Source: Macrostomum lignano
Lineage: Eukaryota
Assembly (NCBI GenBank): GCA_002269645.1
Contig: NIVC01000114.1
Coordinates: 372,001 to 436,000, forward strand
DNA length: 64,000 nucleotides
Reading direction: 5' to 3'
How positions within the stretch are numbered: the stretch's first letter is position 1; each line of letters starts with the position of its first letter. A program made the translations under genes and the position numbers. Below the pieces are notes generated by a model. It had not been told where the DNA came from. It searched no databases and saw nothing but the letters and a program-made list of their open reading frames with translations. Shown in pieces: positions 31,980 through 64,000 of the stretch.

Positions 31980-34881
<2,902 letters not shown>

Positions 34882-45557: not shown

Positions 45558-48500
45558 TCAGTCTGACTCGGCCTTTCTTTTCCGACCTCGACTTTGCGAC
45601 TCGACTTTGAGGACTCCGGCTGCTGCATCAAGTCTCTCCAGCTTCTGCCTGACCCAGCCGATCTTCTCCTCGTCCTGCGTCTCCATGACGACGCGTCTCT
45701 CTTTCTCGATCATCTCCATCTGCTGCAGGCTGAACTCCACGTGCTCGCGGCAGTCGCTGTAGTGAGCCAGAGTGAGCAGCTCCTCCAAGTCCGGGTCTTC
45801 TTCCAGCTCTCGCTTCCAATCCTCTAGTTTATTTGCAGGTGCGCGATTGCGGAGCAGCTCAGCTTGGAGACTCCAGCTCAGGCAGCGGAAGTTCACGTAC
45901 AGGTGGGAGGAGAGAGGCTGCGACATTCTGGCTGTGAACAGAGTCTGCGTGAAGTCGGGAAGGAATGGAAAGCGAGGCGGAGAGTCGCAGGGGAGGCAGA
46001 ACCTCCACGCCAAGTCAAATTCAGTTGAATTAGATAATTTCACTAGTTTCATTATATACGATAAATATTTGCGTTCTTGAATATCCTGCGGCTTGTACCC
46101 CGACTCAACCTGATGTCTCTGCAGCTCCATCGTGAGTCTCTCAGCCTCCTCAGATTCTCCGAACTTCAAATGCGCCATGGCGGTCATGCACAGGGCTGCG
46201 CACTTGCACCACTTCAGCTCATGCAGGAGACTGAGCTGCCTCATTAGGGTGTCTCTGTCGCTCGATTCCGACTGCAGCTCGCTCACACACTGGTGCACCA
46301 CACTGTACACGTCTGCTACTTTTTCGTCAAAACATTCACTGATCTTCGTAATAGCAGGTGGCGCTGTCAGAGGCAGCAGAGTGAACGGGTGAAAGTAGAG
46401 CTTCTCTGACTGCAGAGGTCTCACGAGTTTCCTCAGCTGCTCGACCACTCCGCCGATGTCGCTTCGCAGCTCACGAAGTCGGTCTCGAACCCTCGCCTTC
46501 GTGTTGTCGAAGTCACCGCCGATTCCAGCGTTCTTGAAGTAGAGCGGAGCGTCGGGCATGAAGAAGTGCGGCATGCACTCATCGGGCGAGCTGCTCGAGT
46601 CGATGAAGCTCAGCATCATGTCGAGAGACTCCTTGAGCAGAGCGATCAGATTGTGGGGCTGCCAAGCGTCAGTTTCAGGATCTGTGCCATGCTTCTCTAG
46701 CATTGTGAAGAGCAGAGTCTTTGCATGGTAGGTCTTGAGTCCAGGTGTGTCCAGAGTGAGCGGCAAGTGTCTCTTGAAGATGAACTTGATGAGTGTGAAC
46801 AGCTGGCCCTGGACTGTGCTCAGTCGTCTCATGATGTCTTTCTCCTGGAAGCTGAAGCTCACTCTGAGCTCGTTGGTCTCACTCGGTCTGGTCGCCCGAA
46901 CGAGGTGGACTGCAGTATAACTGTCATCAATCAGTTTTTTAACTCTGTCATTACAGAAACCACTGCAGCACTCGATCGCATGGCACGTGTCCTGTGCAGG
47001 CCGCACACCGCACGCCGTGGCTGTCACTGCAGGTTGGCTGCCTGCAGAGTGCAGTGAGCGGAGAGTCGCTTTGTGGCGAGTAAAAAAGATGGGTTGGTTT
47101 GAAACTGCTGATTTTTTCTTTGCTTTTCTAGTGTTTCTCTATCCAATTAAATATCCTTTCAAGCAAAAAGGTAATTTTTTCGCCTAATTTTTAACGAAAA
47201 CTTAGCTTAGACATTCACTCAGCTACCATCTGTGTTTTTCACTTTGTTGTTTAAATATATATTTGATAAGTGCAAGTGCACAATTGACTTGGCTGAAGTC
47301 AGGTCATGCACGTTTATTCAGCTCTTCAGAGACGCCACAGAATTTTGGTGCTCTCTGAAGAGCCAAACATATGCACCTGTGAGGCATGAGCCTCTGCACC
47401 CACTGAGTTAGCCCAGCTTCAGCTTCAGCTGCTCTGGCTTCATCAGGTTGCAGCTCAGCACAGTGCCCAAGCATCAATAGGACTCAGTGCCGCGCAGCAA
47501 GGCACCAATCAGGCAGTCAGGGCGGTTTCGGTTTGTTTTGATTAAAATTTTCCAAGTGAAAGCAGCAGCACCTCAGCAGAGCCATGCCGCCTACCGTGGG
47601 TCACCCAAGCACCGCTGCACCTGTTGCGTATTGCTATGAGTACTGCAAAGCATAGACTTTTATAATACTTCGGAAATAGTCTATGGTTTATGCGACGCGA
47701 TACGGTACTCTCCTTTGTTTGCTAAGCTTCGAATATTTTCATTTATGAACACAAGACCCTAGGACCGTTGCCGCTAAAATATAGCTTAATTTCAAACTAC
47801 CATAATTCATTGACTTGGCGTTATTCAAACAAAACACACTGCTGCAATCGGAGCCTGTGAATTCAAAACCCAATGGCCCAGCTCAGCCAGTCGGCATCAG
47901 AGTTTTCTTTTCAATTTCGCCCTCCACTTGTTTCAGCACCCAAGACGACATTTGCAGTCTCAGAAGCTGCTGGAGGCTTGGCGCCACTCGGTTGCGAATT
48001 TAAAATTGAGCAAAGTTAATGGGCTTCCAGTTGCATGCGGATCTCAGCATTCTGATGATGAACCCAGCCTCACTCACCTGCTCCCACTGCCACCTGTGCG
48101 TGGCCCTCCGTGACCTGCAGCCGAGTGGCGTCTCGGCAGGAACCAAATCGCTCTCTGTCGCAGCCACCTTCCAGATGGAACTGTTGCCCAGCAACCAGCA
48201 CAGTCCAATCAATGTCCGAGTCTGCAGCTGTCCTGCCGTTCACTTGCACCAGACTGTTGTCCCAGCCCTCTGCGTAGCTGCCCGTCATCCGCCTGTCTTC
48301 CTGTGTGAGGACTCGAGCGACTCCTTCCAGCCGGTCAGCCAGTCTCTGCTGACACTTTGCTCTCTGCTCGGTGAATCCCGCATCGCTGAGCAGTCGATGC
48401 AGCTCCTCGCTCAGGCGCCTGTCTTGCTGGGAGTCGTCTGAGAGCCTGGAATGATCCGAGATGCATGTGGGTGATTTGCTCAGAGTTTGATGGACAGAAC

Positions 48501-51500
48501 AAGCAGGAGAGCTGAGAGTGCAGCTGCTGCAGCACTCAGACTGGCATCTCAAGCAGGAGAGCTGAGAGTGCAGCTGCTGCAGCACTCAGACTGGCATCTC
48601 AAGCAGGAGAGCTGAGAGTGCAGCTGCTGCAGCACCCAGTCCAACCCAATCTCAGCCCTGCTGAGTTTCGCTGCAATTTCTGCCCCAAGCTGCTAGCCTG
48701 TTGGAAGGCGCAATGCGGCAGTGAAAGCCGAACCGGTCAGACTCACCGATAAGGGCCTGAAGCCGAGTGGTGAGCAGCTGCTTGTCGAGCCTCTGGGCTT
48801 CTGCAATGCGGGAAGGAAAGCCAGTGTTCTCACAGCAGTTGAGTATACAAATACATATATACATATATACATATATACATATATGCATATCTCTACCTAT
48901 AAAAATATACATATATACATATATACAAATAATACATATAATACATATATACAAAATTGACTATACAAATAACTTGTGTCGAAAACTTCCATTGTATTTC
49001 CTGGCCAAGTAACCAGTCAGTGCAGCTTTATCAACACCCAATGCTTTTTAGGTAAAGACGAGGATGACAGAAGGCAGAAGCAGAAGTGCATCAGCACATG
49101 TGATCTACTTTACATGTATTTAACTTGTTGGCGTCTGCCCTCGTTCTTCAGGCCCGCGCATGGCTCAGTGTGCATTTCCTAGTCGCATTTGCACACTGCA
49201 CAGTATCTAAATATCAATGCGCAATATCGGGAACAATCAAATATTCTAAATAAATATTATCGCACCGCCTGTTAGGGGCCTCTGAGCTTTTTTCATCGGC
49301 CAATTCTGCTAAATTATGCTAGAACTCATACAGGCATAATTCATGGCTTCCCTAGTCGAGTATGCTAAACGATAATGACAATAAGTCTATACATACGTAG
49401 CCACTCGTAATTTTGCTTATTGTTTACCTCTAGTACCGTATGTATAATCTTCCATTGTATCCTTTTGGAGGGGTTTTTAGGGGTCTACCAATGATTGTTT
49501 AACGATGTCTCAGCGAATCAGAAACGTCCTAGACTGCGCAGGTTTTGGCCATAGACATCGACAACGACTTCGACACTGCCATAGGAAGCGCTATGGAGCG
49601 ATTCCAACTGTACCATAGACTATCGAGTGAATATAGAGTAGAGAAATGCAGGGGACTGTGGTTTGATATAAGCTTGCTTGCTTTAACATCAACCACTAAA
49701 ATGCATCTAATAAATTGGAAAAATCTGCCTACTGATTCTCTTAACGGAGTGTACGTCTTCAAGCGAAATGGATTTCCATTCTCTGCTGAGTGCAACCGAC
49801 CACGCTGGCGACGCTGACCTAGCGGAGTTCATCCGTTTCTTAGAAGATCCTACGATGGATGACCATTCGGTTCTGGATACACCCCTACCGGATATATCAG
49901 ATGACGCTCCTTTGACGGTTGGCGACCTGGATCGCATTAAAATCGATTCGCTTCCTAAAACTACGGGAGAGAAGATGTTCCAACATGGTAAAGCATTTGT
50001 GGATTTTTTAAGTCGACAAACGTAACTGTCTTCCGTGGCAATATCCGAGGCTATGCTAAGCGAGTTTCTGCGCTACTATTACTTCTCGTTGAAGAAAGTT
50101 GATGGAGGAATTTACTCGCCTGCGTCCTTGGTGTGCATTTGTGCCGGCATTCAGCGATATTTTGCCCTAATTCTCAAGTGCCCAGTCAACATAATTTCCG
50201 GAGGTGACTTTGCAGCCGCTAACCGAATGCTACGCGTCAAAGTCCGAGATTTCGTTGGATCCGGTTCCACCAGAAAATAATTTCCCCCAATCGAGGATGG
50301 AGACCTAGAGCGACTGCGGCAATACTTTGACAGAAGCACAGCAGAGCGTCTTAAGGATGAAGTGATTTTTGTTACTCTATACGTCGGGTGAACGCGGCCA
50401 AGAGCACCTGAAGTTTCTCAAGAAGAAGGGTACTTAGGTAGAAGGAGTTGACGCTGATGGCGAAGCATATCTTGGCCTGCCGGATCTGCCAACGAAGAAT
50501 CAATCGACTGAACCGACACGTGCTAAGAACAATATTACAAAGCAAGCTCGTCTCTATGGACAGCAGCGAGAGCTTGTAGTATACTACTACGGCCTTCTAC
50601 CGGAGAGCACAAAGGATTCATCCTTCTTTCCACGACCATTGACCAATGATGGAAGCGGTAACCTTCGGTATTCGGCCAACCAAGTTCGAGGCATTAGCTG
50701 GTTAGCCAACTTCGTGCGTCATCTGCGCCAAGTCTGCAATTTGTCTAAAGCGTATACTAATCATTGTATTAGAGTAACGCGCATCGCGGATCTGCACGAA
50801 TGTGGACACAACCTGGACGACATTATGACTATTACAGGGCAGAGGGCCAAGTCGACCGTCCGGCGTTACCTGTCTAGAAGCTGTGATCGGTCCATTAGTG
50901 GTTCGTCATTAGACAGTAATCTAAGACAATTTATACTCATGACAGCTACGACCCAAGCTTCTATAACTCACAGCCTCCTCTAGAGATAAGGCATATTTAT
51001 AAATAAACTCGATCCCCATTTAGAAACTTTCGAACCTAAACCCCCATTCCTCATGCCCCATTGGTTGTCTTTAAGCTGCATACGAGTTTATAGTTGGGTT
51101 GAAGGTACTAAAAATGAAGCTTAAATTTGAAGTCCGCATCATCGAAAATCCTTGAAATCCTTGAACGTCTTTACAGTACTCTGTCCTTCTGTTGCCCTTG
51201 TTTTTGTTGTTTTTGTTTTCGTTTTTCATGCCGCCCCGCCCCGTCCCCCGTCTCGCGCCCGGGCCAGGGTTTGTGGAGGCCCTGTCCAATCTGGGTGCTT
51301 GCCTTACCCCTCCCTCCTTGCCCCGCCCCACCCTGGGCTGTGCTGTTCGCATTGGCTGTCTGGCTGATAAGCTGCCTGAGCCCCAGGGTTTGGCTCGCCC
51401 CTTTCGTTTCTACCCAAGAAAGTCGGGCACACAAATGATTCTTTGTGTCATTCTTTAATGGGAAATTCATTTTTTCATTTTGTGTCTTTAATGACTTTCC

Positions 51501-52750
51501 TTTTCCTTCCCTCTGCCTAACCCCACCAAATATACTTAAAATGTTTTCTATTGTATAAGGTTTTTTGCTAAGCTTTTCTTAATAAAATTACAATAATGCT
51601 TCACAAAATACAATGCGATACTGATAAGATTCATGAAATTATCGCTTCACTCACCCCGCTCCACTGGGATCCAGCAGCCGCAGCACCTGCCCCTGCTCAA
51701 ATCGCTGTGCCACCTGCGCGCACGTCTGACCCCGACCGTTTCGATGACTCGCATCCGCTCCTCTGTCCATCAGAGCCTTGGATGCTCGCACGTGACCGGC
51801 TTCGCACGCTCGTGACAGAGCAGTCCGACCCTGACTGTCTTCAGCACGCACTGACGCACCGAGATCGATGAGTTTCTCAATGAGCTCGTGATGACCTGCA
51901 TCAGCTGCCAGCATGAGAGCAGTGGCTCCAGTGCTGTCTGGCAGATCGACACGCTGTGTGCTGACTCGCTCATAATTGATCAGTGTGACAGCAAGAGCGA
52001 CGTGTCTTTGAGAGATGGAGAGACGGAGCAGCTGTGTGATGCGAGCTGGCTGCATTCGAGAGAGGGTGTCGGTAAGAACAGAGTTCCTGCCTTCGATGGC
52101 CATTGCTGCAGTGAAGCTGAGGATGGTGCTGGATTGGAAGAGCCAGTCGGGCTCGAGGCCGAGGGATGCAACGAAATCTTCGTGAAGACGAGAGCAAGCC
52201 GCGACTGCGCATTGGAAACGGAGATTCGCTCTCTGATCCAGAGTTGGGAGATAGGAGAGGAATAACTTGACGACTTCTAATTGACCATAGTTTGCAGCAG
52301 ATTTGGCAGCCTCGATGCAGCAATCATTTATTTTCGTTTGGTCGACGATTTTCGACACAAAAAGCTTGACAACCTCCCACTGACGATTGTATGCAGCAGT
52401 GTTGGCAGCGTCAATGCAGCACTGATCTCTTTTCGTTTGGTCAGCGACTTCAGGCACGAGAAACTTGACAATATGCCACTGATCATTTTTTGCAGCGGAT
52501 TCTGCAGCCTTGATATAGCAGTCATCTCTTTTTGCTTGGTCAGCGACTGCCGGCACAAGAAACCTGACGACTTCTAACTGACCCTCACTCGCAGCAAGTT
52601 TTGAAACGGTTTCGCAAAAAAGATATCTTTTGTTTTCTTCTTGCTGAAGTTCCAGGTGATGTTTGAGTGCCTGGATATTTCCTGTCTTGGCGGCCTCATC
52701 AGCACTGATCTGTTCGCTCATTTCGTCTGGTGCGCTGATGAGTGCTTCAT
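45558..52750 (-). CDS. Ankyrin-repeat + Mab-21/cGAS-like nucleotidyltransferase (cGLR) fusion, copy 1 (about 1000 aa; start codon unresolved)
   Basis: Exon 52750-51655 carries ANK repeats and ends GG|gtgagt (phase 2). Exon 48511 (or 48445)-48078 has phase-2 acceptors, carries TGSYAEG...DSDIDW and ends G|gtgagt (phase 1). Exon 47041-45558 has a phase-1 acceptor and carries QDTCHAI, VHLV, LRVSFSFQEK, LKTYHAKTLLF, W, CMPHFFMP (Mab-21 signatures) and then a helical tail. Candidate upstream exons lie at 53128 onward and end at 53381. The domain calls are strong; the ANK-NTase join is inferred. Confidence 0.75.
48500..48636. repeat. 50-bp unit repeated about 2.7 times over the acceptor region of the NTase exon
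   Basis: AAGCAGGAGAGCTGAGAGTGCAGCTGCTGCAGCACTCAGACTGGCATCTC at 48501, 48551 and 48601 (partial). Confidence 0.9.
49768..50983 (+). mobile_element. Crypton-type tyrosine-recombinase transposon, inactivated (DUF3504-like)
   Basis: Stitched reading: LSEFLRYYYFSLKKVDGGIYSPASLVCICAGIQRYF...ERGQEHL...TKNQ...FFPRPL...YTNHCIRVT...IMTITGQRAKSTVRRY. Lesions: TAA 50023, TAA 50278, frameshift near 50380, TAG near 50437. A short upstream ORF at 49545-49817 may belong to the element. Confidence 0.85.
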
Positions 52751-54289
52751 CTAGAAGGTACATAAATATTTTTCTCCTGGTTTATTACGAGTAATTAAAA
52801 TGGTTTAAAAAAGCAGGCAGAGAGAAAGAGGGTGGCGCCGTTCTCTTGAATACTTTTGAAAGGAATACGTAATGATTCCTGGATGTTGTCAGAGTGGCAT
52901 GAGTTTTAAAGGTTAGGGCAGCAATGTTGCGAGAGTCAGCTGCCCAGCCTCAGGCGAGGTGAACCATCCCAGGCCTGAGCAACCGAAACTTCTCTCCCGA
53001 GCATGAGCGCTGAGTCCGCCGCCTTCGCCTCTGTGCACCCAGCATGACAACGGAGAGGCTGCAGCTGCAGCAGCCACCCCAAGCTGTACTTGATGAGGCT
53101 GAGATGGCATATTGCGCCTCAGTGCAGTCTGAAATCCTAAAATCTCCTACTGAGAGGTGTAATGTCAGGTCTCAGCCCAGAGTCAACCTGAACTCCAGAG
53201 AGAAAGTGGGGAGCGAGAAAAACAGGGAAAAGAAAGAGGGGAAGGAGGAGGGAGAAGAGAAGGAGAAGCCAGTTTGGGAATTCAGAGTAAAGGATTTAGT
53301 GAGTGGGAAATCGCATGCCAAATTGACAGCTCACTCCAACGCCAGCACAGCAAACTGCAGCAGGGCAGTGCGGGACTCACCGATGGCCATTTCTGAACTC
53401 GCCAATCTGCTGATGGAGCAGCAGCAGAGACTCGCAGAGAAAGCACAACTCTCAAAAGCAGACAGGAGACTCGGCAGTAACGAAACACGGTACTTGTGAA
53501 AAGAGACAGGAGAGATCAGAGGGCAGAAAGACAAAAGAAAGTATGGTGGGCTGCTGCAGAAGTATTGAACGTGGGTTGGAAAGCAGGCGGGGAGAGAAAG
53601 GAAAGCCAAAAGTCAAGCAAAGCACAGAAATGCACAACAGAGTGAGCGCTTGTCGAAACGCGCGTACAAAGCCGTCACAGAAAGTCATTCCCGCACAACG
53701 GAAGGGCTGATAGTGCAAGCACAGAAAACAGGAAAGAAGGCCCTACCCGCACACCGATGAGTAAAATTTGATCGCGCATTGGCAGGAAAAGCGGGTTTGA
53801 AACGCACGTTAAATATTCGTAGAATAATACCCTCTACTTTCGTGCCCTATGGTAGTAAGCCTGGCGACGCTATTCAGGACGCCTGAGGATGCTTCGCCTC
53901 GGCCTTATGAATGCATCCTGGGAATTTTTTTTATAGAACATGAAGTTACAGGGTATTAGACAAGGAGCTCTATAATTAGCAGTCTCTAGAACTCTATAAC
54001 TCATGGGTATTATAAAGTACTTACAAGCTGTTGAAACCCGCGGATTTTGAACCCGGGGAATTTCAATCCCCGGAACTACGCTCGTATTTTGCATGTATTC
54101 TAAAATCTGAGGTCAAACTCAAACAAAAACTTGTTAATAGTTAGGATAGAGTTAAACATAAAATAGAGTACATTCGTGTAAAATAAGGATTTGAGGCAAA
54201 CATTGCTTTCGTTGGTTGGGGTGCTGCGCAGAATGTCAGGCAAACTCTGGCCTCTATCTGTGCCTCTCCCTATGTCCCTTGGATCCTTT

Positions 54290-54750
54290 GAAATTTCTTT
54301 CTTCTCTTCTTTTTCCTATCTTCTTTCGTCTCGTCTCTTCTCTCGTCTCTCGCCTCTTCTCTCTGTCCTCTCATCTCTTCTTTCTTCTCTCTTCTCTCCT
54401 CTCTCCCCTCTTCTCTCGTCTCAATTCCCTCTTCCCTCTATTCTTTTCTCTCTCCTCTCCTCTCTTCTCTCTGGTCTCTGATCTCTATCTCCTTTGACCT
54501 CCTTTATCTCTTCTCATTTCTCTCTGCTCTCTACTCTCTCCTCTCTCTGCTCTCTACCCTCTCTTCCCTATCCCCTCTTCTCACTCCTTACTCTACCCTC
54601 TCTTAACACTTCCCTCATCTCACCTCTCTCCTTGTTTCTCTCTTCTCTCTACTATCTCCTCTCATCTCTTCTATCGTCTCTTCCCTCACCTCTCAGACTT
54701 CTCTTATCTCTCCTTTTTCTTCTTTTATCTTCTCCCTCTTATTTTTTCCC

Positions 54751-54804
<54 letters not shown>

Positions 54805-55910
54805 ATCTCTCTGCTCTCTCATGTCCCATCTCTCTTCTCTCTAATCTCTCCCCTCTTTCCTCTTCTCTCGGCTCTCTCGTCCTTTTGCCCAATTTCCCCT
54901 GTCCTCTCAATTCAATCTCCTCCCCTCCTCTCTCCTCACTCACTTCTCATCTCTCCCTTGTCTCCACCTGTCATCTCTTAATTCTTATCTCTCCTCTTTT
55001 CTCTCTACTCTCCCATATCTCGTCTGTTCACTCTCGTTTCTGCTCTCTCATCTCCCTTCTCTCATCTCTCATCTGTACTCTCATGTTCTCTCACCTCTCT
55101 CCTCTTGTACTCTTCTCTTTCCCTTTTTTGACTCAGGACTCTCTTTCCTTTCTTCTTTCTTCTCGTCTCTTCTCTTCCCTCTTCTATACTCTCTCCCTCT
55201 CTTGTCTTCTCTCTACTCTCCTCTCTCCTGTGTACTCTTCTCTTTCTCCTCTTCTGACTCCTCTCTTTCCTACTCCTCTCTTCTCTTCCCTCTTGTATAC
55301 TGTCTCCCCTCTATTCTCTTCTCTCGTCTCTCTGCACTCTGCTCTCTCTTCCTTCATCTCCCATTTCTACTCATCTTTCCTTTCATCTCCCTCATCTCTG
55401 CAATATAATCTCTTTCCTCTCTCCTCCTCTTCCTTTTACTCTATCATCTCTCCTTTCTCCTCTCTTCTTTCTCAACTCTCTCATATCTTATCTCCTCTCT
55501 TCTCACTCCTCTTTCTTCCCCTCTCTCCCCCTCTTATCTCCTCTCTTCTCACTCCTCTCTCTTCCCCTCTCTCCCCCTCTTATCTCCTCTCTTCTCTATC
55601 CTTTCTAATCTCTCCTCTCGATCCTCTCTCATCTGCCTCTCTGTTCTCTAATCTCTCATATCTTCTCACTCTTCTCTACTCTCCTCTCTCATCGATCATG
55701 TCTCATCTCTCCCCTCTTCTCTCTCCCTCTTCTTACCTCTACTCTTTCCTCTCCCTCCTCTCTCCCCTCCCTCGCTTCTTCCTCCCATATTCTCTGCTCT
55801 CTCCTCACCCCCTCGTCTCTCCTGTTATCTTCTATCTTTTCTCTTATCCCCCTCTCGCCCCTCCTTTTTTCTAATAGTCTAATCCTTTTCCTTTTCACTC
55901 TCATCTAGCC
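54290..55910. repeat. Long C/T low-complexity tract including (CT)n
   Basis: Direct reading; the Leu/Ser ORFs are artefacts. Confidence 0.93.
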
Positions 55911-56040
55911 CGCAGCCATGAGCTGGATTCTTTATCTGGCCGTTCAGGTAAAAATCTGCCGATCCCTGCTTCGAAAGCCAGTTTGTGGGACATACATTGT
56001 AGTACTGTCATTGTTATCATTTCTCATGCTTGAATCTGAT

Positions 56041-56212
56041 TACATGCGCAACCTTGGGATTCACTCGGCCGTTTCTATTGGCAACACATACATGTAAGTC
56101 GCTATTGGCTGAGAGCAGTCACGTGACTAATATTCCGTCCAATAGCAACTTACATGTGTGTGTTGCCAATAGAAACGGCCGAGTGAATCCCAAGGTTGCG
56201 CCCAAGCATGTT
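56041..56212. mobile_element. Palindromic MITE of about 170 bp (young copy)
   Basis: Near-perfect hairpin TACATGCGCAACCTTGGGATTCACTCGGCCGTTTCTATTGGCAACAC...GTGTTGCCAATAGAAACGGCCGAGTGAATCCCAAGGTTGCG. Confidence 0.85.
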
Positions 56213-57399
56213 TAATCACGTCATCTTTCTGGCCAATTGGCAGCCCTGAGAGGAATTTGTGTATCTCCAGCTCCACCACTACAGTTTGCACTCTGCAGCA
56301 GTCTAACAACCAAGGAAATACGCATTTCTTAGAATCCATTTATTAACTTTTAAAGTTACCTTATGCCAATCTTAATTCTTAATGTTATAAGCTTCATGCT
56401 GTAACTAACTAATTTAGTAGGATTGCATTGTAATCAGTTAATCGTTAGTTTTTCGCTATTTTTACAAACCATCCCACATTGTCTTGACTCTTGATTTGCC
56501 ATCCACAGTTAAACTGCTGCAGACTTGTCTATACAGAGGACAGTGGTTTGAATCTCTCGCTAAACTGTCTCTCCTCTCCACGCCTCTCCACTCGCGGGGG
56601 TACAGAGAAGGCTATTAAAAAGTTATTCCAAAACACTGTACATTCGCTATGTACATTGAGCCCTATCGCCTGACCCTTCGTCTGGGCTGGGGGAATGAGT
56701 GAGTGAGCGGCACAAACAACAGAAAAAGCAGTCAAACTTCATATGCTTATAGTTTCTGTAAGCTTCGCTTCACGTGAAGCAAACTTATGGCAGCCCAAAG
56801 TTAGTCATTTAAAAACCTATTTGCACCCTTTGCCCAGATCGGGAAAGAGGCAGGCGGGCGGAGGTTGGGGTGGCTGCCTCGCTGAAAAAAACAGCCTAAC
56901 TTTAAAAGTGCACAGCGGCTTTCAGGATTAACTTTGAAATTTGAAATGTTACACGATTGTGTGTCAAAATAGTTGAAGATTGATTGTGATAAATTTGAAG
57001 AGAATCGGTAGAAGTGGAGCGGCGCTATGGAGGATTAAGCGAAAAAATCGCGCATTTTGAGCAGTTTTTTGTACTTTTAGGTGGTAAAACTTGAGTCTAG
57101 GAAATTTAAAGGTAGCCTAAGACATTCTCCGTAGTAAGTCTAGGGTGGGTGTAGTCTGGTGTCATTTGGTTGAGCGGTTTGGGAGTCCATAGCGATCAAA
57201 ATTGTACACAGACACACACACACAGACAGAGTTTTGATTTTTATAGGTAGAGATTGTTTCTCGGTCCACTCTTTGGGCCATAGACATGTTGTTGACCGGG
57301 CATCTGCATCCACAGACTGTGGATGCATTCTGTGTCTGCATCTGCATCTACATCTAACGGAACAACAACTGCGGCATATGAGGTATCTGCCACTGAATC

Positions 57400-57730
57400 C
57401 TCTACATCCTCAGAGCGATTCGATAGGCTAGATGATGCAGAAATAGAAATAGGCCTCCGCTATTCCGGACAAAACGCGTCGCAAGGAACACTCGGCCATC
57501 ATTGTGTTCAACAAGTGGTGCGCCTGAGCACAGATTTGCAAGGAGAAACCAAATCACTTCTTGTCTCCAAACCGATCGAAGAACCGAGTGGAGACAGTTG
57601 GAAGAATCTTCTGGGGCGGTTCTTTTTCGAAGTGCGCAAACAGAATGGGAGCAAGTGCAATGCATTAATTCAGCTGTTGCACGGGAGTGACTGTCTACAT
57701 TTACACCGTCAACAATACGATGCACTTTCG
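57400..57730 (+). mobile_element. Second, more decayed Crypton/DUF3504-like fragment (N-terminal part)
   Basis: IPDKTRRKEHSAIIVFNKWC, then by frameshift KNLLGRFFFEVRKQNGSK, resembling the Crypton N-terminal T..A..VF..W and L..FF.EVRK.DG motifs. It may continue beyond the 57.8-58.4 kb minisatellite. Confidence 0.5.
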
Positions 57731-57829
57731 AAAAATTGTTTGCCACTTTTAACTACTTGTCTCCTCGTTGCTGCAATTTTGCGCTCATCCTGCTTCTAGG
57801 TTCGTATGAGATGCTTCTACTAGTCCTCA

Positions 57830-58465
57830 AATCGTTTCTCAGTCATCAAGCAATCGTTTCTCAGTCCTCAACCAATCATTTCTCAGTCCTCAATCAATCA
57901 TTTCTCAGTCCTCAATCAATCGTTTCTCAGTCCTCAATCAATCATTTCTCAGTCCTCAATCAATCATTTCTCAGTCCTCAATCAATCATTTCTCAGTCCT
58001 CAATCAATCATTTCTCAGTCCTCAATCAATCATTTCTCAGTCCTCAATCAATCATTTCTCAGTCCTCAATCAATCATTTCTCAGTCCTCAATCAATCATT
58101 TCTCAGTCCTCAATCAATCATTTCTCAGTCCCAATCAATCGTTTCTCAGTCCTCAACTAACAGTTTCTCAGTCCTCAACTAACAGTTTCTCAGTCCTCAA
58201 CTAACAGTTTCTCAGTCCTCAACTAACAGTTTCTCAGTCCTCAACTAACAGTTTCTCAGTCCTCAACTAACAGTTTCTCAGTCCTCAACTAACAGTTTCT
58301 CAGTCCTCAACTAACAGTTTCTCAGTCCTCAACTAACAGTTTCTCAGTCCTCAACTAACAGTTTCTCAGTCCTCAATCAATCGTTTCTCAGTCCTCAACC
58401 AATCGTTTCTCAGTCCTCAACCAATAGTTTCTCAATCCTCATCTTGAGGACTGAGAAACGATTTA
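57830..58465. repeat. 22-bp minisatellite with two variant blocks, ending in an inverted unit
   Basis: TTTCTCAGTCCTCAATCAATCA then TTTCTCAGTCCTCAACTAACAG; GAGGACTGAGAAACGATT near 58447-58463 is the reverse complement of the unit. Confidence 0.92.
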
Positions 58466-60589
58466 ATGGCTCGAAAAATAAAGCAAAACCATGGACTGCA
58501 GTTGAGCATTCAACAGAAAAGAAAAGCCTCGTCAAACGATACAGTTTTAGTAGATTAAATTGTACATTACTCAACCATTTATTGCCCTAGAGACTAGATA
58601 AATGGCGAATATAATACGTGTGTATCCAATCACTTAGAAAGGACGCTCTTTGGTGTCTTGACACTAACGTAAGAACATATACTCAGCAACATTGAAAAGT
58701 CGCCATCACAGAAGATTCCGTCTGTGGTCGCCACTTTTGAGAGTGCAGGTAAAGTCTCTCAATCTTTGCGAGTGACGCAACTTGCTACGCCGCGGCAGAC
58801 TTGAGTTGAGGAATGAAGTGGGGGGAGCGGTGTGCTACCCCGATCAATTTGTTTGTATCTTTTATTCCAGAATAGTCCAAGAGAAATTGCTCACTGGCGC
58901 AGAGTGGCGACTTTTCAATGTTGCTGAGTATAAGTCTGTTCTGTGCCAGAACTTTGTATCCATAGCATGATGCCCGTACGAGCACATGTTCAGTGTTTGT
59001 GTGACGGCGGATTCCAGAGAAAATAATTTTTACTCTTATAAAAACTCGATCTTAAAATTTGAACCATTTTCCACTCCTTTTGCAGTTTGAGTTGGAGCAG
59101 AGGCGACTCCAGTGGGCTGAGCTGAGGGGCAGCTGCAGCCCCACTGAAATTTTGAGCTTCGATCCCTTCTGGCGACCCCGCCAGGACAGCCGCTGAGGAC
59201 CGGCGCCCGAATGGAGCACTGAGCTCGGCCTTCAGAACTCCGGTCTCAGCAGCCAAGCAGCCTCTGCAGCTATAGCGCCCTTTTCCTGCTGCCCCTGCAC
59301 TGCGGCCTGGCATTGGCGCCCTTTTCCTGCTGCCCCTGCACTGCGGCCTGGCATGGCGCCATTAGTGGGGCGCACTTAGTTGGCGCCCTTAGTTTGCACC
59401 CTCAATTGACGCCCTTAAAGTTGGCGCCCTCGTTTGGCGCCCTCAGCTTGCGGCCTTGAAGAGTTTACAAGTGGTGATCAGTCACTCAAAAACTCCCACT
59501 TCCAGACCGCAAGCCTGGGAAGAGAAGTCAGTGATCAATTCCTATTGCAGGCTCCTCTTGTTCGTCGAGCAGGTCTGTAGAGTCTCCTTAAAGTATTCTT
59601 CCTCCGGAGTTGTCTTCTTGAGTTCTGAAGTCGGCCGAGTATGAGAGCGTATAAATTCAATCCGTCGACGTCAATGTATTCTTCAAGTTCAGAAATCAGA
59701 ATCAGAGATGCGCCCTAATAACAAAGTCAGCTTTATAACAAAAACGAGGTCCTCCGAAAGAGCGTCTTATTCTAGAAATAACGAAATCGGAGTCCTGTGC
59801 CCCTATCGGTTACTCTAGGGTACCAAAATCAATCAATCAATAATCGTCTAAGAGTCCGCAGATCCTACCCAATCCCTTAGGAATAGGTGAACCTAGATTT
59901 AATAACTCAATAGAAATCAACTGATCAGTAACGGCCGGCAATAACCGCAGGTCTCAATAATCAAAATAACAAAGACTCTGACAAAGGCTTATCAATTCGT
60001 ATTCGTCTCCCTCGGAGATATAGCCTCATTTGCGTGCTCTGGCAAAGCACAAGATCTCTTGAGGCTGCTCCGAGTCTGAGGTTTCAGCTCCGATTTTTCG
60101 CTTGTATTTATACACAATTTGGGTCGACCTTGAACTCAAACCGTTTTTAATGAGGTCAAGAAAGAAATTTTATTATTTGAAAGCCGAGGGTTTTGAATAG
60201 AGAAGGGTGAGACTTGGGTCGCATTCAGGTTAAAATTTACCATATTTGGAAATTCTAAAGACGGACATTGAAAACGGTTTTTTCTGGTAGAATGATTACT
60301 CGCTGTTTTCGTGATATTACTGGTATTGCTAAAAATAGAGTACTGCGTATGTTATTTTTAAGTTTGTATTCGTAATTTTATCTTACTACTTCTACTAGTC
60401 TGCTATGCTTGGAGATCTCTACACACTCAGTTGGCGCCGCCCCCCCCCACGAAAAAGGTCATCATTTTCAGCCACTGTGAATTATTCAGGCATGTGAATT
60501 TTTTGATGTTTTGACAATTTACTTGGCTTAATTTAATTTTTTTGACCGACCAGAGAACAGAAGGGTCTGTGAGATGCCATTGGGTCTGA

Positions 60590-60785
60590 GGGCTGCCATT
60601 ATCTGTGTGAGGGCTGCCGTTGTCTGTGTGAGGGCTGCCGTTGTCTGTGTGAGGGCTGCCGTTGTCTGTGTGAGGGCTGCCGTTGTCTGTGTGAGGGCTG
60701 CCGTTGTCTGTGTGAGGGCTGCCGTTGTCTGTGTGAGGGCTGCCGTTGTCTGTGTGAGGGCTGCCGTTGTCTGTGTGAGGGTCCT
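60590..60785. repeat. 21-bp minisatellite
   Basis: Unit GTTGTCTGTGTGAGGGCTGCC, about 9 copies. Confidence 0.93.
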
Positions 60786-61035
60786 GCAGTCCCATGACCT
60801 CCTGACCATTAGAGGGCGAGTAGGTTTATTTACTTTTTGGATCCTACAGTTGAATGACTTTAAATATTTTTGTCTTAGCGTATATCCATTTATTTCATGA
60901 AATTTTTGCCGTGTAAAGACAATGCAAGAATGAGTTAATACAACTTGTTTTGTAGGCCTAAAGACTTGTGGTAGTAAGAGCAAAATATTGCTATTAAAAA
61001 TATTCATGCTCGAATTTTTCATTATTTTTTATTTT

Positions 61036-61325
61036 AACAACAACAACAACAAAATACGCTGTCATGATGGTAAAAGTCAGCGTCACAGGGCGCGCTTCAT
61101 GGCTTGGGCGCGAACAAAGGCCGCGCCACCGGCAGTGTCCGGGGCGCCGGCGTCAGCCAGCAGACAGTCGACATAACGCCGAGTTCGCGCTTGACCTCGC
61201 CGGTAGGGTGCCTGCAGCGTGAGCAGCAGCACCTCCTGCACCGGCTGTGGGCAGTACGACTCGGCGCGGATGAGATGGCCTGCGAGCTGGAGTCGCCGAC
61301 GGCGCAGTATTTTAGCTGGATATAA
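61036..61325 (-). mobile_element. 5'-truncated RTE-clade non-LTR retrotransposon 3' end
   Basis: ILRRRRLQLAGHLIRAE...LLL...RRGQARTRRYVDCLLADAG matches the RTE ORF C-terminus and is followed by a (TTG)n tail at 61036-61052. Confidence 0.75.
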
Positions 61326-61464
61326 TTCTAAAAATTTTAACAAAGCAAGTTTAGATATTGACTCGTACGGATCCAATCATTTTACGAATATCATTTTCTA
61401 TTAATTTTTGAACAATATGATCACATGAATAGAATTAGGATAAAAAACGGTATTGTAGCTGAAG

Positions 61465-61735
61465 TTCATGAGGCTGTCAGTCACTGAATGTTCGTAAAGG
61501 AGCTGTCAGGCTGTCAGTCACTGAATGTTCATGATGGAACTATCAGGCTGTCAGTCAGTGAATGTTCATGAGGGAGCTGTCAGGCTGTCAGTCACTGAAT
61601 GTTCATGAGGGAGCTGTCAGGCTGTCAGTCAGTGAATGTTCATGAGGGAGCTGTCAGGCTGTCAGTCAGTGAATGTTCATGAGGGAGCTGTCAGGCTGTC
61701 AGTCAGTGAATGTTCATGAGGGAGCTGTCAGGCTT
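61465..61735. repeat. 37-bp minisatellite, second array
   Basis: Same unit as 43155-43880. Confidence 0.93.
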
Positions 61736-61974
61736 GCAGTTGCTACAGGGTACATAAGCACACGATGAAAGTACATAATGAAATCGATTTGCAGATTTGC
61801 AGACTGATTGACATGATTCTGAGATCAGGTGCTTAAATAATCCAGGTGAATGTATAGGCACTAAGTTAAGCCATAAAAATAAGTTTGGATTATTTATCCG
61901 AATTACTTACACTGAAATGTCTTAAACTGTACGCGCCAGAGGGGCCAGAGAAGCTTACAAATTCCGAGTTCAAC

Positions 61975-62041
61975 TCAAGCTGCTGCATCAAGTCTCTCCA
62001 GCTTCTCCCTGACCCAGCCGACCTCTGAATTTTCCAGGTTC
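61975..62041 (-). other. Candidate alternative terminal exon of cGLR copy 2
   Basis: ttatctgcag|G AAC CTG...: NLENSEVGWVREKLERLDAAA*, an intact acceptor and open frame. Confidence 0.4.
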
Positions 62042-62459
62042 CTGCAGATAACAGCTACCTGTGCATTTGGCTTGAATATTTCATTAAAAAGCATTGGCAA
62101 TTGGGTATTGAAGTCCGCAGAACAAAATCGCAGAGAAAAGCCCGCATCGAAGCAGACGCGCAGTTTGAAGGGGAAAAGTAATTAAGCATGCAGTGTGAAT
62201 TGAATTGCAGCACAAATGAGCAAAACAGAAGTTCATAGCAGGAGGGCTGATCGCACTAAGTCAGCAACAATAATCTAGGATTATTCATTTTACAAAGAGT
62301 ATTTCGGCATTAAAACTGATTGAAATGAAAATGAGAAAACTTACTGACTCAACGGAATGTAACGTAACTAAAAAAAGGAACCCCAAAGATAGAAGAAAAA
62401 AATGAGTCTAAAACTCCAGTCTAGAAAAACTTCAAAATTTGAGCAACGAAGTCCTCAGG

Positions 62460-64000
62460 TCATTGCGGTCTCATCCGGCTGAGCTTGGCGTGAGTCCAGC
62501 TGTCTCTCTGCTCCGCTGCAGTTTCCATGGCTACCAGGCGCCCCAAGTCGGCCCCGTCTCGCCGCAGCCTCGCCCTCGCCCACAGCCTTCGCTCCTCATC
62601 TTCCCTGCTGCGGTGAGCGCCGCTGTCGCTGTCGCTGCGGTTCGAAACTCGCCACCGCTTCTGCCTGACCCAGCCGATCTTCTCCTCGTCCTGCGTCTCC
62701 ATGACGACGCGTCTCTCTTTCTCGATCATCTCCATCTGCTGCAGGCTGAGCTCCACATGCTCGCGGCAGTCGCTGTAGTGAGCCAGAGTGAGCAGCTCCT
62801 CCAAGTCCGGGTCTCCAAGCAGCTGTTCAATCCAATGATCGAATGCGATTGCAGGTGCGCGATTGCGGAGCAGCTCAGCTTGGAGACTCCAGCTCAGGCA
62901 GCGGAAGTTCACGTACAGGTGGGAGAAGAGAGGCTGCGACAGTCTGGCTGTGAACAGAGTCTGCGTGAAGTCGGGAAGGAATGGGAAGCAAGGCGGAGAG
63001 TCGCAGGGGAGGCAGAACCTCCACGCCCAGTCTGAGTCTTCTGGCAGTTCTATCTTATTTTGTAGCCAGTTACCCTTGTCTCGGATGTCGTGTGGCTTCA
63101 ACCCTGACTCAACCTGATGTCTCTGCAGCTCCATCGCGAGTCTCTCAGCCTCCTCAGATTCTCCAAACTTCAAATGCGCCATGGCGGTCATGCACAGGGC
63201 GGCGCACTTGCACCACTTTAGCTTATGCAGGAGGCTGAGCTGCCTCATCAGGGTGTCTCTGTCGCTCGATTCCAACTGCAGCCCGCTCACACACTGGTGC
63301 ACAACACTGTACACGTCTGCGCACTTGTGGTACATTTCTGGATATTCACTTCCTTTCCTGATCTCTGTGACAGCAGGCGGCGCTGTCAGAGGCAGCAGAG
63401 TGAACGGGTGAAAGTAGAACTTCTCTGACTGCAGAGGTCTCACGAGTCTCCTCAGCTGCTCGACCACTCCACCGATGTCGCTTCTCAGCTCACAAAGTCG
63501 GTGTCGAACCCTCGCCTTCGTGTTGTCGAAGTCGCCGCCAATTCCAGCGTTCTTGAAGTAGAGCGGAGCGTCGGGCATGAAGAAGTGCGGCATGCACTCA
63601 TCGGGCGAGCTGCTCGAGTCGATGAAGCTCAGCATCATGTCGAGAGACTCCTTGAGCAGAGCGATCAGATTGTGGGGCTGCCAAGCCTCAGTTTGAGGAT
63701 CTGTGCCATGCTTCTCTAGCATTGTGAAGAGCAGAGTCTTTGCATGGTAGGTCTTGAGTCCAGGTGTGTCCAGAGTGAGCGGCAAGTGTCTCTTGAAGAT
63801 GAACTTGATGAGTGTGAACAGCTGGCCCTGGACTGTGCTCAGTCGTCTCATGATGTCTTTCTCCTGGAAGCTGAAGCTCACTCTGAGCTCGTTGGTCTCA
63901 CTCGGTCTGGTCGCCCGAACGAGGTGAACATACTGCCCTTTATGAGTCAGTTTTTCAATTCTGTACTCACAGAAACTGCTGCAGCACTGGATCACATGGC
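62460..64000 (-). CDS. Mab-21/cGAS-like protein, copy 2 (large 3' exon; the gene continues beyond the window)
   Basis: Nearly identical to copy 1 from VHLVRATRPSETNELRVSFSFQEK through CMPHFFMPDAPLY and in the helical tail, with an offset of about 17.0 kb. The 3' flanks are also homologous. Confidence 0.88.
   Translation of the reverse strand, partial: HVIQCCSSFCEYRIEKLTHKGQYVHLVRATRPSETNELRVSFSFQEKDIMRRLSTVQGQLFTLIKFIFKRHLPLTLDTPGLKTYHAKTLLFTMLEKHGTDPQTEAWQPHNLIALLKESLDMMLSFIDSSSSPDECMPHFFMPDAPLYFKNAGIGGDFDNTKARVRHRLCELRSDIGGVVEQLRRLVRPLQSEKFYFHPFTLLPLTAPPAVTEIRKGSEYPEMYHKCADVYSVVHQCVSGLQLESSDRDTLMRQLSLLHKLKWCKCAALCMTAMAHLKFGESEEAERLAMELQRHQVESGLKPHDIRDKGNWLQNKIELPEDSDWAWRFCLPCDSPPCFPFLPDFTQTLFTARLSQPLFSHLYVNFRCLSWSLQAELLRNRAPAIAFDHWIEQLLGDPDLEELLTLAHYSDCREHVELSLQQMEMIEKERRVVMETQDEEKIGWVRQKRWRVSNRSDSDSGAHRSREDEERRLWARARLRRDGADLGRLVAMETAAEQRDSWTHAKLSRMRPQ

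What the first reader, a model, noticed from the sequence alone, without database searches (positions are those of the whole stretch)
45558..64000. Tandem ankyrin-cGAS-like (ANK-Mab21 NTase) receptor cluster: candidate flatworm innate-immune signalling system
Seen: three separate ORFs in the track (ANK 51651-52763, NTase fragment 48070-48585, Mab-21 45558-47027) have splice sites with matching phases (2/2 and 1/1). They fuse into one protein of about 1000 aa: N-terminal ankyrin array, NTase core with GS and all three catalytic acids (SDID plus the D of QDTCHAI), Mab-21 helical lobe, and an extra helical domain of about 250 aa. A second paralogue lies 17 kb away. Established: cGAS/cGLR enzymes use this hG[GS]...DxD...D core to make cyclic dinucleotides on sensing nucleic acid and signal through STING. 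Inference: an expanded family in which ankyrins or the tail act as variable sensors, possibly for non-nucleic-acid ligands, with an unknown product and effector. The W-P motifs usual between the third Asp and the HLV strand are missing here. Ankyrin-bearing cGLRs may already be catalogued computationally; I cannot check novelty.
Basis: partly seen in the sequence, partly recalled or inferred. Interest (0 to 1): 0.9.

Follow-up and report, generated by a model that had tools for sequence, protein, structure and literature searches.

The report
Flatworm ankyrin–cGAS-like receptor gene pair
The window holds one complete and one cut-off copy of a flatworm (Macrostomum) gene that joins ankyrin repeats to a cGAS-like enzyme. 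The gene is real and intact, but its family was already catalogued and screened in a 2023 survey, and its trigger, product and receptor are still unknown.

Summary
Three minus-strand ORFs join through canonical GT-AG introns with matching phases. The product is about 987 aa: ankyrin array, nucleotidyltransferase (NTase) lobe with GS, DID and a third Asp, Mab-21 C-lobe, and a 285-aa tail. Macrostomum lignano proteins align collinearly with all three exons. The NTase-exon acceptor at 48445 sits at the same codon and phase as in an annotated M. lignano gene. An AlphaFold model (pLDDT 84) matches cGAS, MAB21L1 and MB21D2 with Foldseek probability 1.0. The tail has no relative among solved structures. 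A second paralogue's last exon lies 17 kb upstream and runs off the window.

Li et al. 2023 already list ankyrin-fused cGAS-like receptors (cGLRs). They cloned five M. lignano members, including the closest homologue found here (PAA68676.1, 83% identical). No flatworm enzyme was among their 15 active ones.

New here:
- The protein is acidic (pI 5.7), unlike cGLRs that sense nucleic acid.
- The N-terminal ankyrin array is the most variable part (30-43% identity against 75-90% elsewhere).
- The tandem paralogues are mosaic, which suggests gene conversion.
- The expansion looks specific to Macrostomum (at least 90 clusters at 50% identity).

Verdict: a new member of a known kind, of moderate interest.

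The parts
51655..52763 (-). Gene 1, coding exon 1: ATG at 52763 and the ankyrin-repeat region (370 aa). The donor GG|GTGAGT follows 51655 (phase 2).
   Evidence: ORF. Sequence. Pfam Ank_2 E 1.6e-23. Collinear with M. lignano proteins.
52264..52583 (-). Variable N-terminal array of divergent 33-aa ankyrin-like units. At DNA level it is a 99-bp x3.2 tandem repeat. This is the most divergent part of the family.
   Evidence: Tandem Repeats Finder. Identity to M. lignano paralogues is 30-43% here against 75-90% elsewhere.
51741..51956 (-). Conserved canonical ankyrin repeats (residues about 270-341) next to the linker.
   Evidence: Best Pfam Ank_2 stretch is 270-341. Consensus is conserved across paralogues.
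48446..51654 (-). Intron 1 (3.2 kb). It may hide a mini-exon, as the M. lignano P0003 gene has one. It contains a decayed plus-strand tyrosine-recombinase-like element and tandem repeats.
48078..48445 (-). Coding exon 2: N-terminal spine helices and the NTase lobe. It carries G55-S56 (48282-48277) and D77-I-D79 (48216-48208). The acceptor is cattccAG|G and the donor is CAG|GTGAGT (phase 1).
   Evidence: Sequence. Motif conservation. The homologous acceptor in the M. lignano gene is at the same codon and phase.
47042..48077 (-). Intron 2 (1.0 kb). Its position is conserved with the M. lignano P0003 gene, where the intron is 17 kb.
45558..47041 (-). Coding exon 3. It carries the third catalytic Asp D140 (46991-46989), the Mab-21 C-lobe (Pfam PF20266 match at 46542-46754), the family-specific tail, and the stop codon at 45560-45558.
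45561..46421 (-). C-terminal tail domain (287 aa). It is modelled with confidence as helical hairpins plus a small beta element. No solved-structure relative was found. It ends in SRGRKRKAESD, which looks like a nuclear localisation signal (NLS).
   Evidence: AlphaFold model, pLDDT 83.9. Best Foldseek PDB match E 0.5 and TM below 0.3. No PADLOC hit.
62460..64000 (-). Paralogue 2: last exon only (Mab-21 C-lobe, tail and stop). Its upstream exons lie beyond the window end. Its different Arg-rich C-terminal end matches M. lignano P0003.
   Evidence: ORF. tblastn to P0003 residues 486-998 at 86%. Alignment to gene 1.

Best explanation
The locus holds two head-to-tail members of a greatly expanded gene family that appears specific to Macrostomum. 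One is complete and one is cut by the window end. The family encodes ankyrin-repeat / cGAS-like receptor (cGLR, Mab-21 superfamily) fusion proteins.

Gene 1 runs from 52763 to 45558 on the minus strand. It has three coding exons and encodes about 987 aa.

Shown here:
- The gene structure.
- The cGAS/Mab-21 fold of the core.
- Conservation of the [DE]h[DE]h-X60-h[DE]h active-site motif and of the GS motif.
- Acidic charge.
- A hypervariable N-terminal ankyrin array.
- A conserved tail of unknown fold.

Inferred mechanism, by analogy with characterised cGLRs:
- The protein rests inactive.
- A ligand engages the variable ankyrin array, the tail, or both. This ligand is most likely a protein or another non-nucleic-acid molecule rather than dsDNA or dsRNA.
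- That switches on the nucleotidyltransferase core.
- The core makes a cyclic di- or oligonucleotide second messenger from NTPs.
- The messenger is read by a downstream receptor that has not been identified.

Tandem duplication, gene conversion and fast protein evolution (Ka/Ks about 0.6-0.7) diversify the repertoire, as expected for an immune receptor family.
For: - Splice phases and open frame.
- Collinearity with M. lignano proteins and conserved intron positions and phase.
- At least 25 annotated M. lignano models carry Ank and this core in one protein.
- AlphaFold model of core plus tail: pLDDT 84.4, pTM 0.87.
- The 50 Foldseek matches listed (86 with E <= 0.001) are all cGAS, MAB21L1 or MB21D2. 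Probability is 1.0 and target-normalised TM is 0.44-0.55.
- The family profile hits the sequences of cGLR1 (8gjy, E 2e-4) and cGAS (E 3e-3).
- hhalign to mollusc cGLRs: 96.9% probability, E 1.4e-10.
- GS, DID and the third D are conserved in all aligned paralogues that cover the region except P0031.
- The D79-D140 spacing of 60 residues lies within the X50-90 of the cGLR motif as Li et al. define it.
- pI is 5.7 overall and 6.1 for the core. cGLRs that sense nucleic acid have pI above 8.5.
- The ankyrin array is the most variable segment.
- 90 clusters at 50% identity reach E below 1e-30. All 8 named ones checked are M. lignano.
- The two paralogues show mosaic divergence.
- Ka/Ks is 0.60-0.69 against the M. 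lignano gene.
- Li et al. 2023 class these proteins as cGLRs with ankyrin modules.
Against: - No enzyme activity is known for any member. Li et al. cloned the cores of five M. lignano members, and none is among their 15 active enzymes. Those came from insects, anemones, molluscs, hydras and corals.
- The NTase lobe is so diverged that Pfam PF03281 does not detect it, and hhalign aligns only the C-lobe.
- The loop from GS to DxD is about 20 residues, longer than the usual 9-13.
- The flanks of the third Asp (Q-D-T) are not hydrophobic in this subfamily.
- Without model coordinates, I could not check that the catalytic residues sit close together.
- No RNA evidence from this genome shows the splice junctions.
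- cGAS and STING were reported lost in flatworms (Wu et al. 2014). I did not test whether Macrostomum has STING, so the signalling route is open.
Confidence: 0.6

Rival explanations
1. The protein is a non-enzymatic Mab-21-type scaffold. It keeps the cGAS fold and relic motifs but works through protein-protein contacts via the ankyrin array and tail. For example, it could recruit kinases or adaptors and make no nucleotide messenger, as proposed for MAB21L1 and for crustacean Mab21 proteins.
For: - MAB21L1 and MB21D2 are among the Foldseek hits, with scores close to those of cGAS.
- No flatworm enzyme is among the active cGLRs of the 140-protein screen.
- A 2026 paper reports shrimp Mab21 proteins that activate IKK-epsilon outside canonical nucleic-acid sensing (PMC12928593, abstract seen).
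- Two large protein-interaction modules flank the core.
- One paralogue, P0031, has lost the DxD and the third-Asp region yet keeps the rest.
Against: GS, DID and the third Asp are kept in about 30 paralogues whose protein identity falls as low as 30% and whose Ka/Ks is 0.6-0.7. In a family evolving this fast, that argues the active site is under selection. Li et al. separate Mab21L1-like proteins as lacking a predicted active site, and this family has one.
Confidence: 0.27
2. There are two separate genes. The ankyrin ORF ends at its own TGA (51651). The NTase/Mab-21 exons form an independent mRNA, for example one that is spliced-leader trans-spliced at 48445. On this reading the apparent fusion is an artefact of annotation.
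For: - No transcript data exist for this genome.
- Intron 1 is 3.2 kb and holds a transposon remnant.
- Spliced-leader trans-splicing is common in M. lignano (PMC8629364, title and abstract seen).
- Some M. lignano models are clearly merged or broken. P0002 carries a second NTase unit, and P0039 and P0064 are 2381 and 3379 aa.
Against: - The stop codon lies inside a consensus GTGAGT donor, and the phases match.
- In the M. lignano P0003 gene, the ankyrin and NTase exons lie within 1.6 kb of each other in a single annotated gene model.
- The same architecture recurs in models from two annotation sources, NCBI PAA and UniProt A0A1I8.
- The first Met in exon 2 sits just before the GS motif, so a stand-alone product would lack the N-terminal spine helices.
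Confidence: 0.06
3. Gene 1 is a decaying or unexpressed extra copy in a large, fast-turnover family, with no function of its own.
For: - Ka/Ks of 0.6-0.7 is high.
- The family is very large.
- The neighbourhood is rich in repeats and transposon remnants.
Against: - About 2.96 kb of coding sequence across three exons stays open, with intact canonical splice sites.
- The catalytic and structural motifs are all intact.
- Ka/Ks is still below 1.
- The C-terminal end, including its stop position, matches that of the M. lignano paralogues P0001, P0004 and P0009.
Confidence: 0.07

Closest known systems
Macrostomum lignano ankyrin-cGLR proteins catalogued by Li et al. 2023 (PAA68676.1 = BOX15_Mlig016402g1, screen construct #93; PAA93208.1, construct #92)
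   Same: - Same architecture: ankyrin array, NTase, Mab-21 C-lobe and tail.
- 83% identity over core plus tail, with the same motifs.
- Same intron positions and phase.
- The C-terminal end of paralogue 2 matches P0003.
   Different: - The exact proteins of this window are not in the databases searched. The best match is 83-90% identical, so this is another species or an unannotated paralogue.
- The N-terminal ankyrin array is only 30-43% identical.
- Intron sizes differ. Intron 1 is 3.2 kb here, against two small introns and a mini-exon there. Intron 2 is 1 kb against 17 kb.
Animal cGAS-like receptors with known activity (human and mouse cGAS, Drosophila cGLR1, oyster and coral cGLRs)
   Same: Bilobal Pol-beta-type NTase plus Mab-21 helical lobe, the GS motif, and the [DE]h[DE]h...h[DE]h catalytic acids. 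By fold and by profile these are the best matches.
   Different: - Acidic (pI 5.7-6.1) rather than basic.
- No Zn-thumb sequence was seen.
- The GS-to-DxD loop is longer.
- The segment after the third Asp is short and lacks W-P motifs.
- It carries an N-terminal ankyrin array and a 285-aa C-terminal domain.
- No product or ligand is known.
- Sequence identity to cGAS in the fold alignments is 12-16%.
MAB21L1 / MB21D2 (Mab-21 proteins with no known enzymatic output)
   Same: Same fold, with Foldseek scores close to those of cGAS (5eom, 7lt1). No known product.
   Different: Li et al. describe the Mab21L1/2/3 group as lacking a predicted functional active site. This family keeps GS and all three acidic residues and has extra domains.
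[quoted passage not shown] 2023)
   Same: A cGLR core fused to ankyrin repeats, within a lineage-specific expansion.
   Different: Different phylum. Li et al. found 3 of the 42 coral cGLRs fused to extra domains such as ankyrin repeats and death domains. In Macrostomum the ankyrin fusion is the rule across dozens of paralogues. The coral has 7 STING genes, whereas STING in Macrostomum was not tested.

Membership tests
cGAS-like receptor (cGLR) / Mab-21 superfamily | Bilobal cGAS/Mab-21 fold: a Pol-beta-type NTase lobe plus a helical C-lobe | tested here: met
   AlphaFold model, pLDDT 84.4 and pTM 0.87. The 50 Foldseek PDB matches listed are all cGAS, MAB21L1 or MB21D2, with probability 1.0, E down to 1e-7 and target-normalised TM 0.44-0.55.
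cGAS-like receptor (cGLR) / Mab-21 superfamily | Sequence homology to the Mab-21 C-terminal domain | tested here: met
   Pfam PF20266 E 6e-6, 26.7 bits against a cut-off of 24.1. Profile against PDB sequences: cGLR1 8gjy E 2e-4 and cGAS E 3e-3. hhalign to mollusc cGLRs: 96.9% probability, E 1.4e-10.
cGAS-like receptor (cGLR) / Mab-21 superfamily | Sequence homology to the Mab-21 NTase lobe (Pfam PF03281) | tested here: not met
   No PF03281 hit even at E up to 10. hhalign did not extend into the N-lobe. The lobe is recognised only through motifs and the predicted fold.
cGAS-like receptor (cGLR) / Mab-21 superfamily | Active-site motif: G[GS], then [DE]h[DE]h, X50-90, h[DE]h (as used by Li et al. 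2023) | tested here: met
   G55-S56, D77-I-D79-W, then 60 residues, then Q-D140-T. In the model these lie on beta1/helix, beta2 and a later strand, as the fold requires. They are conserved in all aligned paralogues that cover the region except P0031. Caveats: the GS-to-DxD loop is about 20 residues, and the flanks of D140 are polar in this subfamily.
cGAS-like receptor (cGLR) / Mab-21 superfamily | Ligand-dependent synthesis of a nucleotide second messenger | not testable with these tools
In the published screen, the M. lignano cores (#89-93) are not among the 15 active enzymes.
cGAS-STING pathway | A STING (or other cyclic-nucleotide) receptor encoded in the same genome | not tested
   None lies in the window. 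Wu et al. 2014 reported cGAS and STING lost in flatworms, but they did not examine Macrostomum. The word-index protein search would be too insensitive and would be saturated by vertebrate STINGs, so I did not run it.
Nucleic-acid-sensing cGLRs | Basic protein (pI above 8.5) with a positively charged ligand groove | tested here: not met
   pI is 6.08 for the core and 5.74 for the full length. The criterion is from Li et al. 2023.
Bacterial CD-NTases (CBASS) | Match to CD-NTase defence-system profiles | tested here: not met
   No PADLOC hit at E up to 1 for the core or the tail.
Ankyrin-repeat proteins | Tandem 33-aa ankyrin repeats | tested here: met
   Pfam Ank_2 E 1.6e-23 with 4 stretches, and Ank E 3.7e-19. 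A 99-bp tandem period is visible at DNA level.

The most novel reading that the evidence does not exclude
The Macrostomum ankyrin-cGLR-tail family may be a germline-diversified repertoire of receptors for non-nucleic-acid ligands. On this reading the hypervariable ankyrin array binds pathogen proteins directly. The signal would leave by a route that does not use STING, in a phylum reported to lack it. That route could be a new nucleotide receptor, or the structurally unprecedented tail domain acting as an oligomerisation or effector module.
Probability: 0.2. Interest if true: 0.75.

Novelty: new member of a known kind. Interest (0 to 1): 0.38.

Why it matters
Most flatworms are said to have lost cGLR and STING immunity. 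Macrostomum, a free-living flatworm used as a laboratory model, is the exception, with dozens of ankyrin-fused cGLRs. If these enzymes are active, they would be a tractable case of a cGLR triggered by something other than nucleic acid: they are acidic and carry a variable ankyrin module. They would also raise the question of what reads the signal in this lineage.

The specific gain from this window is modest. It gives a clean three-exon gene model for one member and evidence of tandem duplication with gene conversion. It also points to the N-terminal ankyrin array as the diversifying part and to a conserved tail with no relative among solved structures.

Tried and rejected
- **Pfam on the fused core.** Only Mab-21_C was found. 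The NTase-lobe model PF03281 was not hit.
- **Single-sequence search of PDB sequences.** Only marginal cGAS hits, E about 0.14. The family profile did better.
- **hhalign against one coral cGLR.** Uninformative, 14% probability. A five-sequence mollusc profile gave 96.9%, but only for the C-lobe. Residue-level equivalence of the catalytic acids therefore rests on motifs and on secondary-structure positions in the model.
- **Tail domain alone.** No significant match to solved structures, to PADLOC or to Pfam. A TPR-like label was considered and rejected as unsupported, because TM is below 0.3.
- **Alternative acceptor 48511.** It is phase-compatible and has some similarity to the P0014 linker. 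I ranked it second because it lies in a 50-bp tandem repeat, and because 48445 is the positional homologue of the annotated M. lignano acceptor.
- **Exact look-up of a neighbouring gene product, to identify the genome.** Not on record.
- **STING and cGLR counts for Macrostomum in Li et al. Table S5.** Not found in the held copy.
- **Later papers on flatworm cGLRs.** None found.
- **STING homology search.** Considered and not run. The candidate cap of the word index would fill with vertebrate STINGs, so a negative result would mean nothing.


Full report
**What is in the sequence**

The window is eukaryotic. It has spliced genes, many microsatellites and remnants of transposable elements.

Reading the sequence gives these junctions:
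- The first ORF's stop codon lies inside a consensus donor, GG|GTGAGT. The exon ends at 51655 in phase 2.
- The second ORF has two possible acceptors, both supplying one base: 48445 (cattccAG|G) and 48511.
- It also has a consensus donor after 48078 (CAG|GTGAGT, phase 1).
- The third ORF is preceded by acceptors at 47041 and 47026. Both supply two bases.

All four combinations give one open frame of 982-1009 aa. I prefer 51655 to 48445 and 48078 to 47041, which gives 987 codons including the stop.

**Independent support for the gene model**

A protein search with the NTase/Mab-21/tail part returned 37 proteins. Thirty-six carry a Macrostomum lignano name and one is an unnamed JGI metagenome protein. 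The best are 83-90% identical, and most carry ankyrin Pfam domains in the same polypeptide.

tblastn of these proteins against the window is collinear with the three exons. P0003 residues 19-330, 348-466 and 464-942 map to 52595-51663, 48438-48076 and 47048-45615.

I fetched the M. lignano gene for P0003 and mapped its exons:
- Its NTase exon starts at the same codon, in the same phase 2, as window position 48445.
- Its NTase|Mab-21 intron is at the same position as the window's intron 2.
- Intron sizes differ. The M. lignano gene has a mini-exon between the ankyrin and NTase exons, so a mini-exon in the window's 3.2-kb intron 1 cannot be excluded.

The alternative acceptor 48511 lies inside a 50-bp x2.8 tandem repeat. 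No transcript data exist for this genome, so the junctions are inferred, but the inference is strong.

**The second paralogue**

Its last exon is at 62460 to beyond 64000 on the same strand and is cut by the window end. It matches P0003 residues 486-998 at 86%, and its stop codon lies 16.9 kb from that of gene 1. Nothing else from the family lies between the two genes.

**What the protein is**

Pfam finds ankyrin repeats (E 1.6e-23) and the Mab-21 C-terminal domain just above threshold (26.7 bits against 24.1). It does not find the Mab-21 NTase lobe, PF03281.

An AlphaFold model of core plus tail, built on 33 family sequences, is confident (pLDDT 84.4, pTM 0.87). The 50 Foldseek matches listed against the PDB are all cGAS, MAB21L1 or MB21D2. 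Probability is 1.0, E reaches 1e-7, and target-normalised TM is 0.44-0.55.

Sequence profiles agree:
- The family profile hits cGLR1 (8gjy, E 2e-4), then cGAS, MAB21L1 and MB21D2.
- hhalign against a small mollusc cGLR profile gives 96.9% probability, but only over the C-lobe.

The catalytic signature is present:
- G55-S56.
- D77-I-D79.
- D140, 60 residues after D79. This is within the X50-90 spacing that Li et al. use to define the cGLR active site.
- In the model these residues lie on the strands where the fold requires them.
- They are conserved in all aligned paralogues that cover the region except P0031.

The family departs from the norm in several ways:
- The GS-to-DxD loop is long, about 20 residues.
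- The flanks of D140 are polar.

**The tail**

The last 287 residues model with confidence on their own (pLDDT 83.9). They have no significant relative among solved structures. The best match has E 0.5 and TM below 0.3, and the weak matches are TPR-like proteins. There is no Pfam or PADLOC match either.

In the exhaustive representative search, the strong hits cover the profile through the tail. Ninety clusters at 50% identity have E below 1e-30. The weaker hits, at E about 1e-12, cover only the Mab-21 core. All eight named strong hits that I looked up are M. lignano proteins. As far as tested, both the tail and the expansion are specific to Macrostomum.

**Properties that bear on mechanism**

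- *Charge.* The protein is acidic: pI 5.66 for the ankyrin part, 6.08 for the core, 5.52 for the tail and 5.74 overall. Li et al. report pI above 8.5 for cGLRs that sense dsDNA or dsRNA. They suggest that acidic cGLRs respond to ligands other than nucleic acid.
- *Where the variation lies.* The N-terminal ankyrin array is 30-43% identical between the window protein and M. lignano paralogues. Every other segment is 75-90% identical in the close paralogues. The array is also a 99-bp tandem repeat at DNA level.
- *Mosaic paralogues.* In the last exon, the two window paralogues share 90 consecutive codons with no synonymous difference. Next to these lie patches where Ka equals or exceeds Ks. This pattern suggests gene conversion with local diversification, but the counts per patch are small.
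- *Rate of change.* Ka/Ks against the M. lignano P0003 gene is 0.60-0.69 in all three exons. That is fast, but not neutral.

**Most likely function**

I think this is a ligand-activated nucleotidyltransferase of the cGLR type. The variable ankyrin array, and perhaps the tail, would serve as the recognition or regulatory module. The ligand is probably not nucleic acid. Activation would produce a nucleotide second messenger.

Only the anatomy, the fold, the motif conservation, the charge and the pattern of variation are shown here. Activation, the product and the receptor are inferred by analogy. My confidence is about 0.6.

The main rival, at about 0.27, is a non-enzymatic Mab-21 scaffold. It is supported by three points:
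- No flatworm enzyme is among the published active cGLRs.
- MAB21L1 and MB21D2 are almost equally good fold matches.
- A report describes crustacean Mab21 proteins that signal outside the canonical route.

Conservation of the catalytic residues across a fast-evolving family argues against this rival.

Two minor rivals remain: separate genes (0.06) and a dead copy (0.07).

**Comparison with what is known**

Li et al. 2023 (PMC9980059) surveyed about 3,000 animal cGLRs.
- They state that some carry ankyrin-repeat modules. They also state that "most platyhelminthes" have no cGLRs beyond Mab21-like proteins.
- Their Table S2 lists Ank_2 domains on M. lignano PAA68676.1 and others.
- Their Table S3 lists five M. 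lignano constructs in the 140-protein screen. Construct #93 is PAA68676.1, my P0003, the closest homologue of the window proteins. Construct #92 is from the same subfamily.
- The constructs begin at the NTase core and so lack the ankyrin array.
- The 15 active enzymes they describe come from insects, anemones, molluscs, hydras and corals.

Wu et al. 2014 reported cGAS and STING lost in flatworms, but they did not examine Macrostomum. I found no later paper on flatworm cGLRs in the held library.

The kind of protein, the ankyrin fusion and even the nearest homologue are therefore already catalogued.

**Verdict**

The feature is a new member of a known kind.

Interest is moderate (0.38). The biology of this family is open and could be rewarding: an acidic cGLR with an ankyrin module, expanded in a phylum thought to lack the pathway, with an unknown receptor. 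This window adds one more member rather than a new principle.

Noticed in passing
window 49768-50983 (+), inside intron 1 of gene 1; similar ORF at 57323-57799 (+): Three consecutive plus-strand ORFs have weak Pfam matches to the QRICH1 domain (E 3e-3) and to Phage_integrase (E 6e-3), both below the curated cut-offs. This is probably a decayed Crypton-type tyrosine-recombinase element.
   Followed up: partly
window 48500-48639: A 50-bp tandem repeat (2.8 copies, 98% matches) lies just upstream of the NTase-exon acceptor.
   Followed up: partly
window 48175-48160 and 46985-46950 (core residues H90, C95, C142, C147, C148): A Cys/His cluster is nearly invariant across the family. It flanks the third catalytic Asp (FHLEGGC ... 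DTCHAIxCCSxFC). It could be a structural metal site. This could not be checked without model coordinates.
   Followed up: no
window 45561-45600 and 62463-62600; M. lignano P0017, P0022: The C-terminal ends differ between paralogues. Gene 1 ends in SRGRKRKAESD, which looks like a nuclear localisation signal. Paralogue 2 ends in a 45-aa Arg-rich extension. Some M. lignano paralogues end in hydrophobic, membrane-anchor-like segments. This hints at different cellular locations.
   Followed up: no
window 62460-63995 versus 45558-47027: Divergence between the tandem paralogues is mosaic. Ninety codons have zero synonymous change, and next to them lie patches with Ks 0.15-0.67 and Ka at or above Ks. 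This suggests gene conversion.
   Followed up: partly
window 19719-20837 (+); 25426-30496 (-); 3277-3894 (-): Other genes in the window: a ZIP zinc transporter exon (Pfam E 5.6e-28), a multi-exon WD40/Utp12 gene that may be PWP2-like, and the transmembrane region of a Cys-loop ligand-gated ion channel.
   Followed up: partly
window 54300-55806, 57830-58441, 60587-60781, 61471-61734, 32459-33616: The 9.7-kb spacer between the two paralogues and other parts of the window hold long CT-rich microsatellite tracts and several minisatellites (periods 21, 22 and 37 bp). These produce long spurious ORFs.
   Followed up: no
M. lignano proteins P0002, P0039, P0064: Some M. lignano models carry two or more NTase units or are 2,400-3,400 aa long. 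They could be true multi-cGLR fusions, as Li et al. describe, or merged tandem genes.
   Followed up: no
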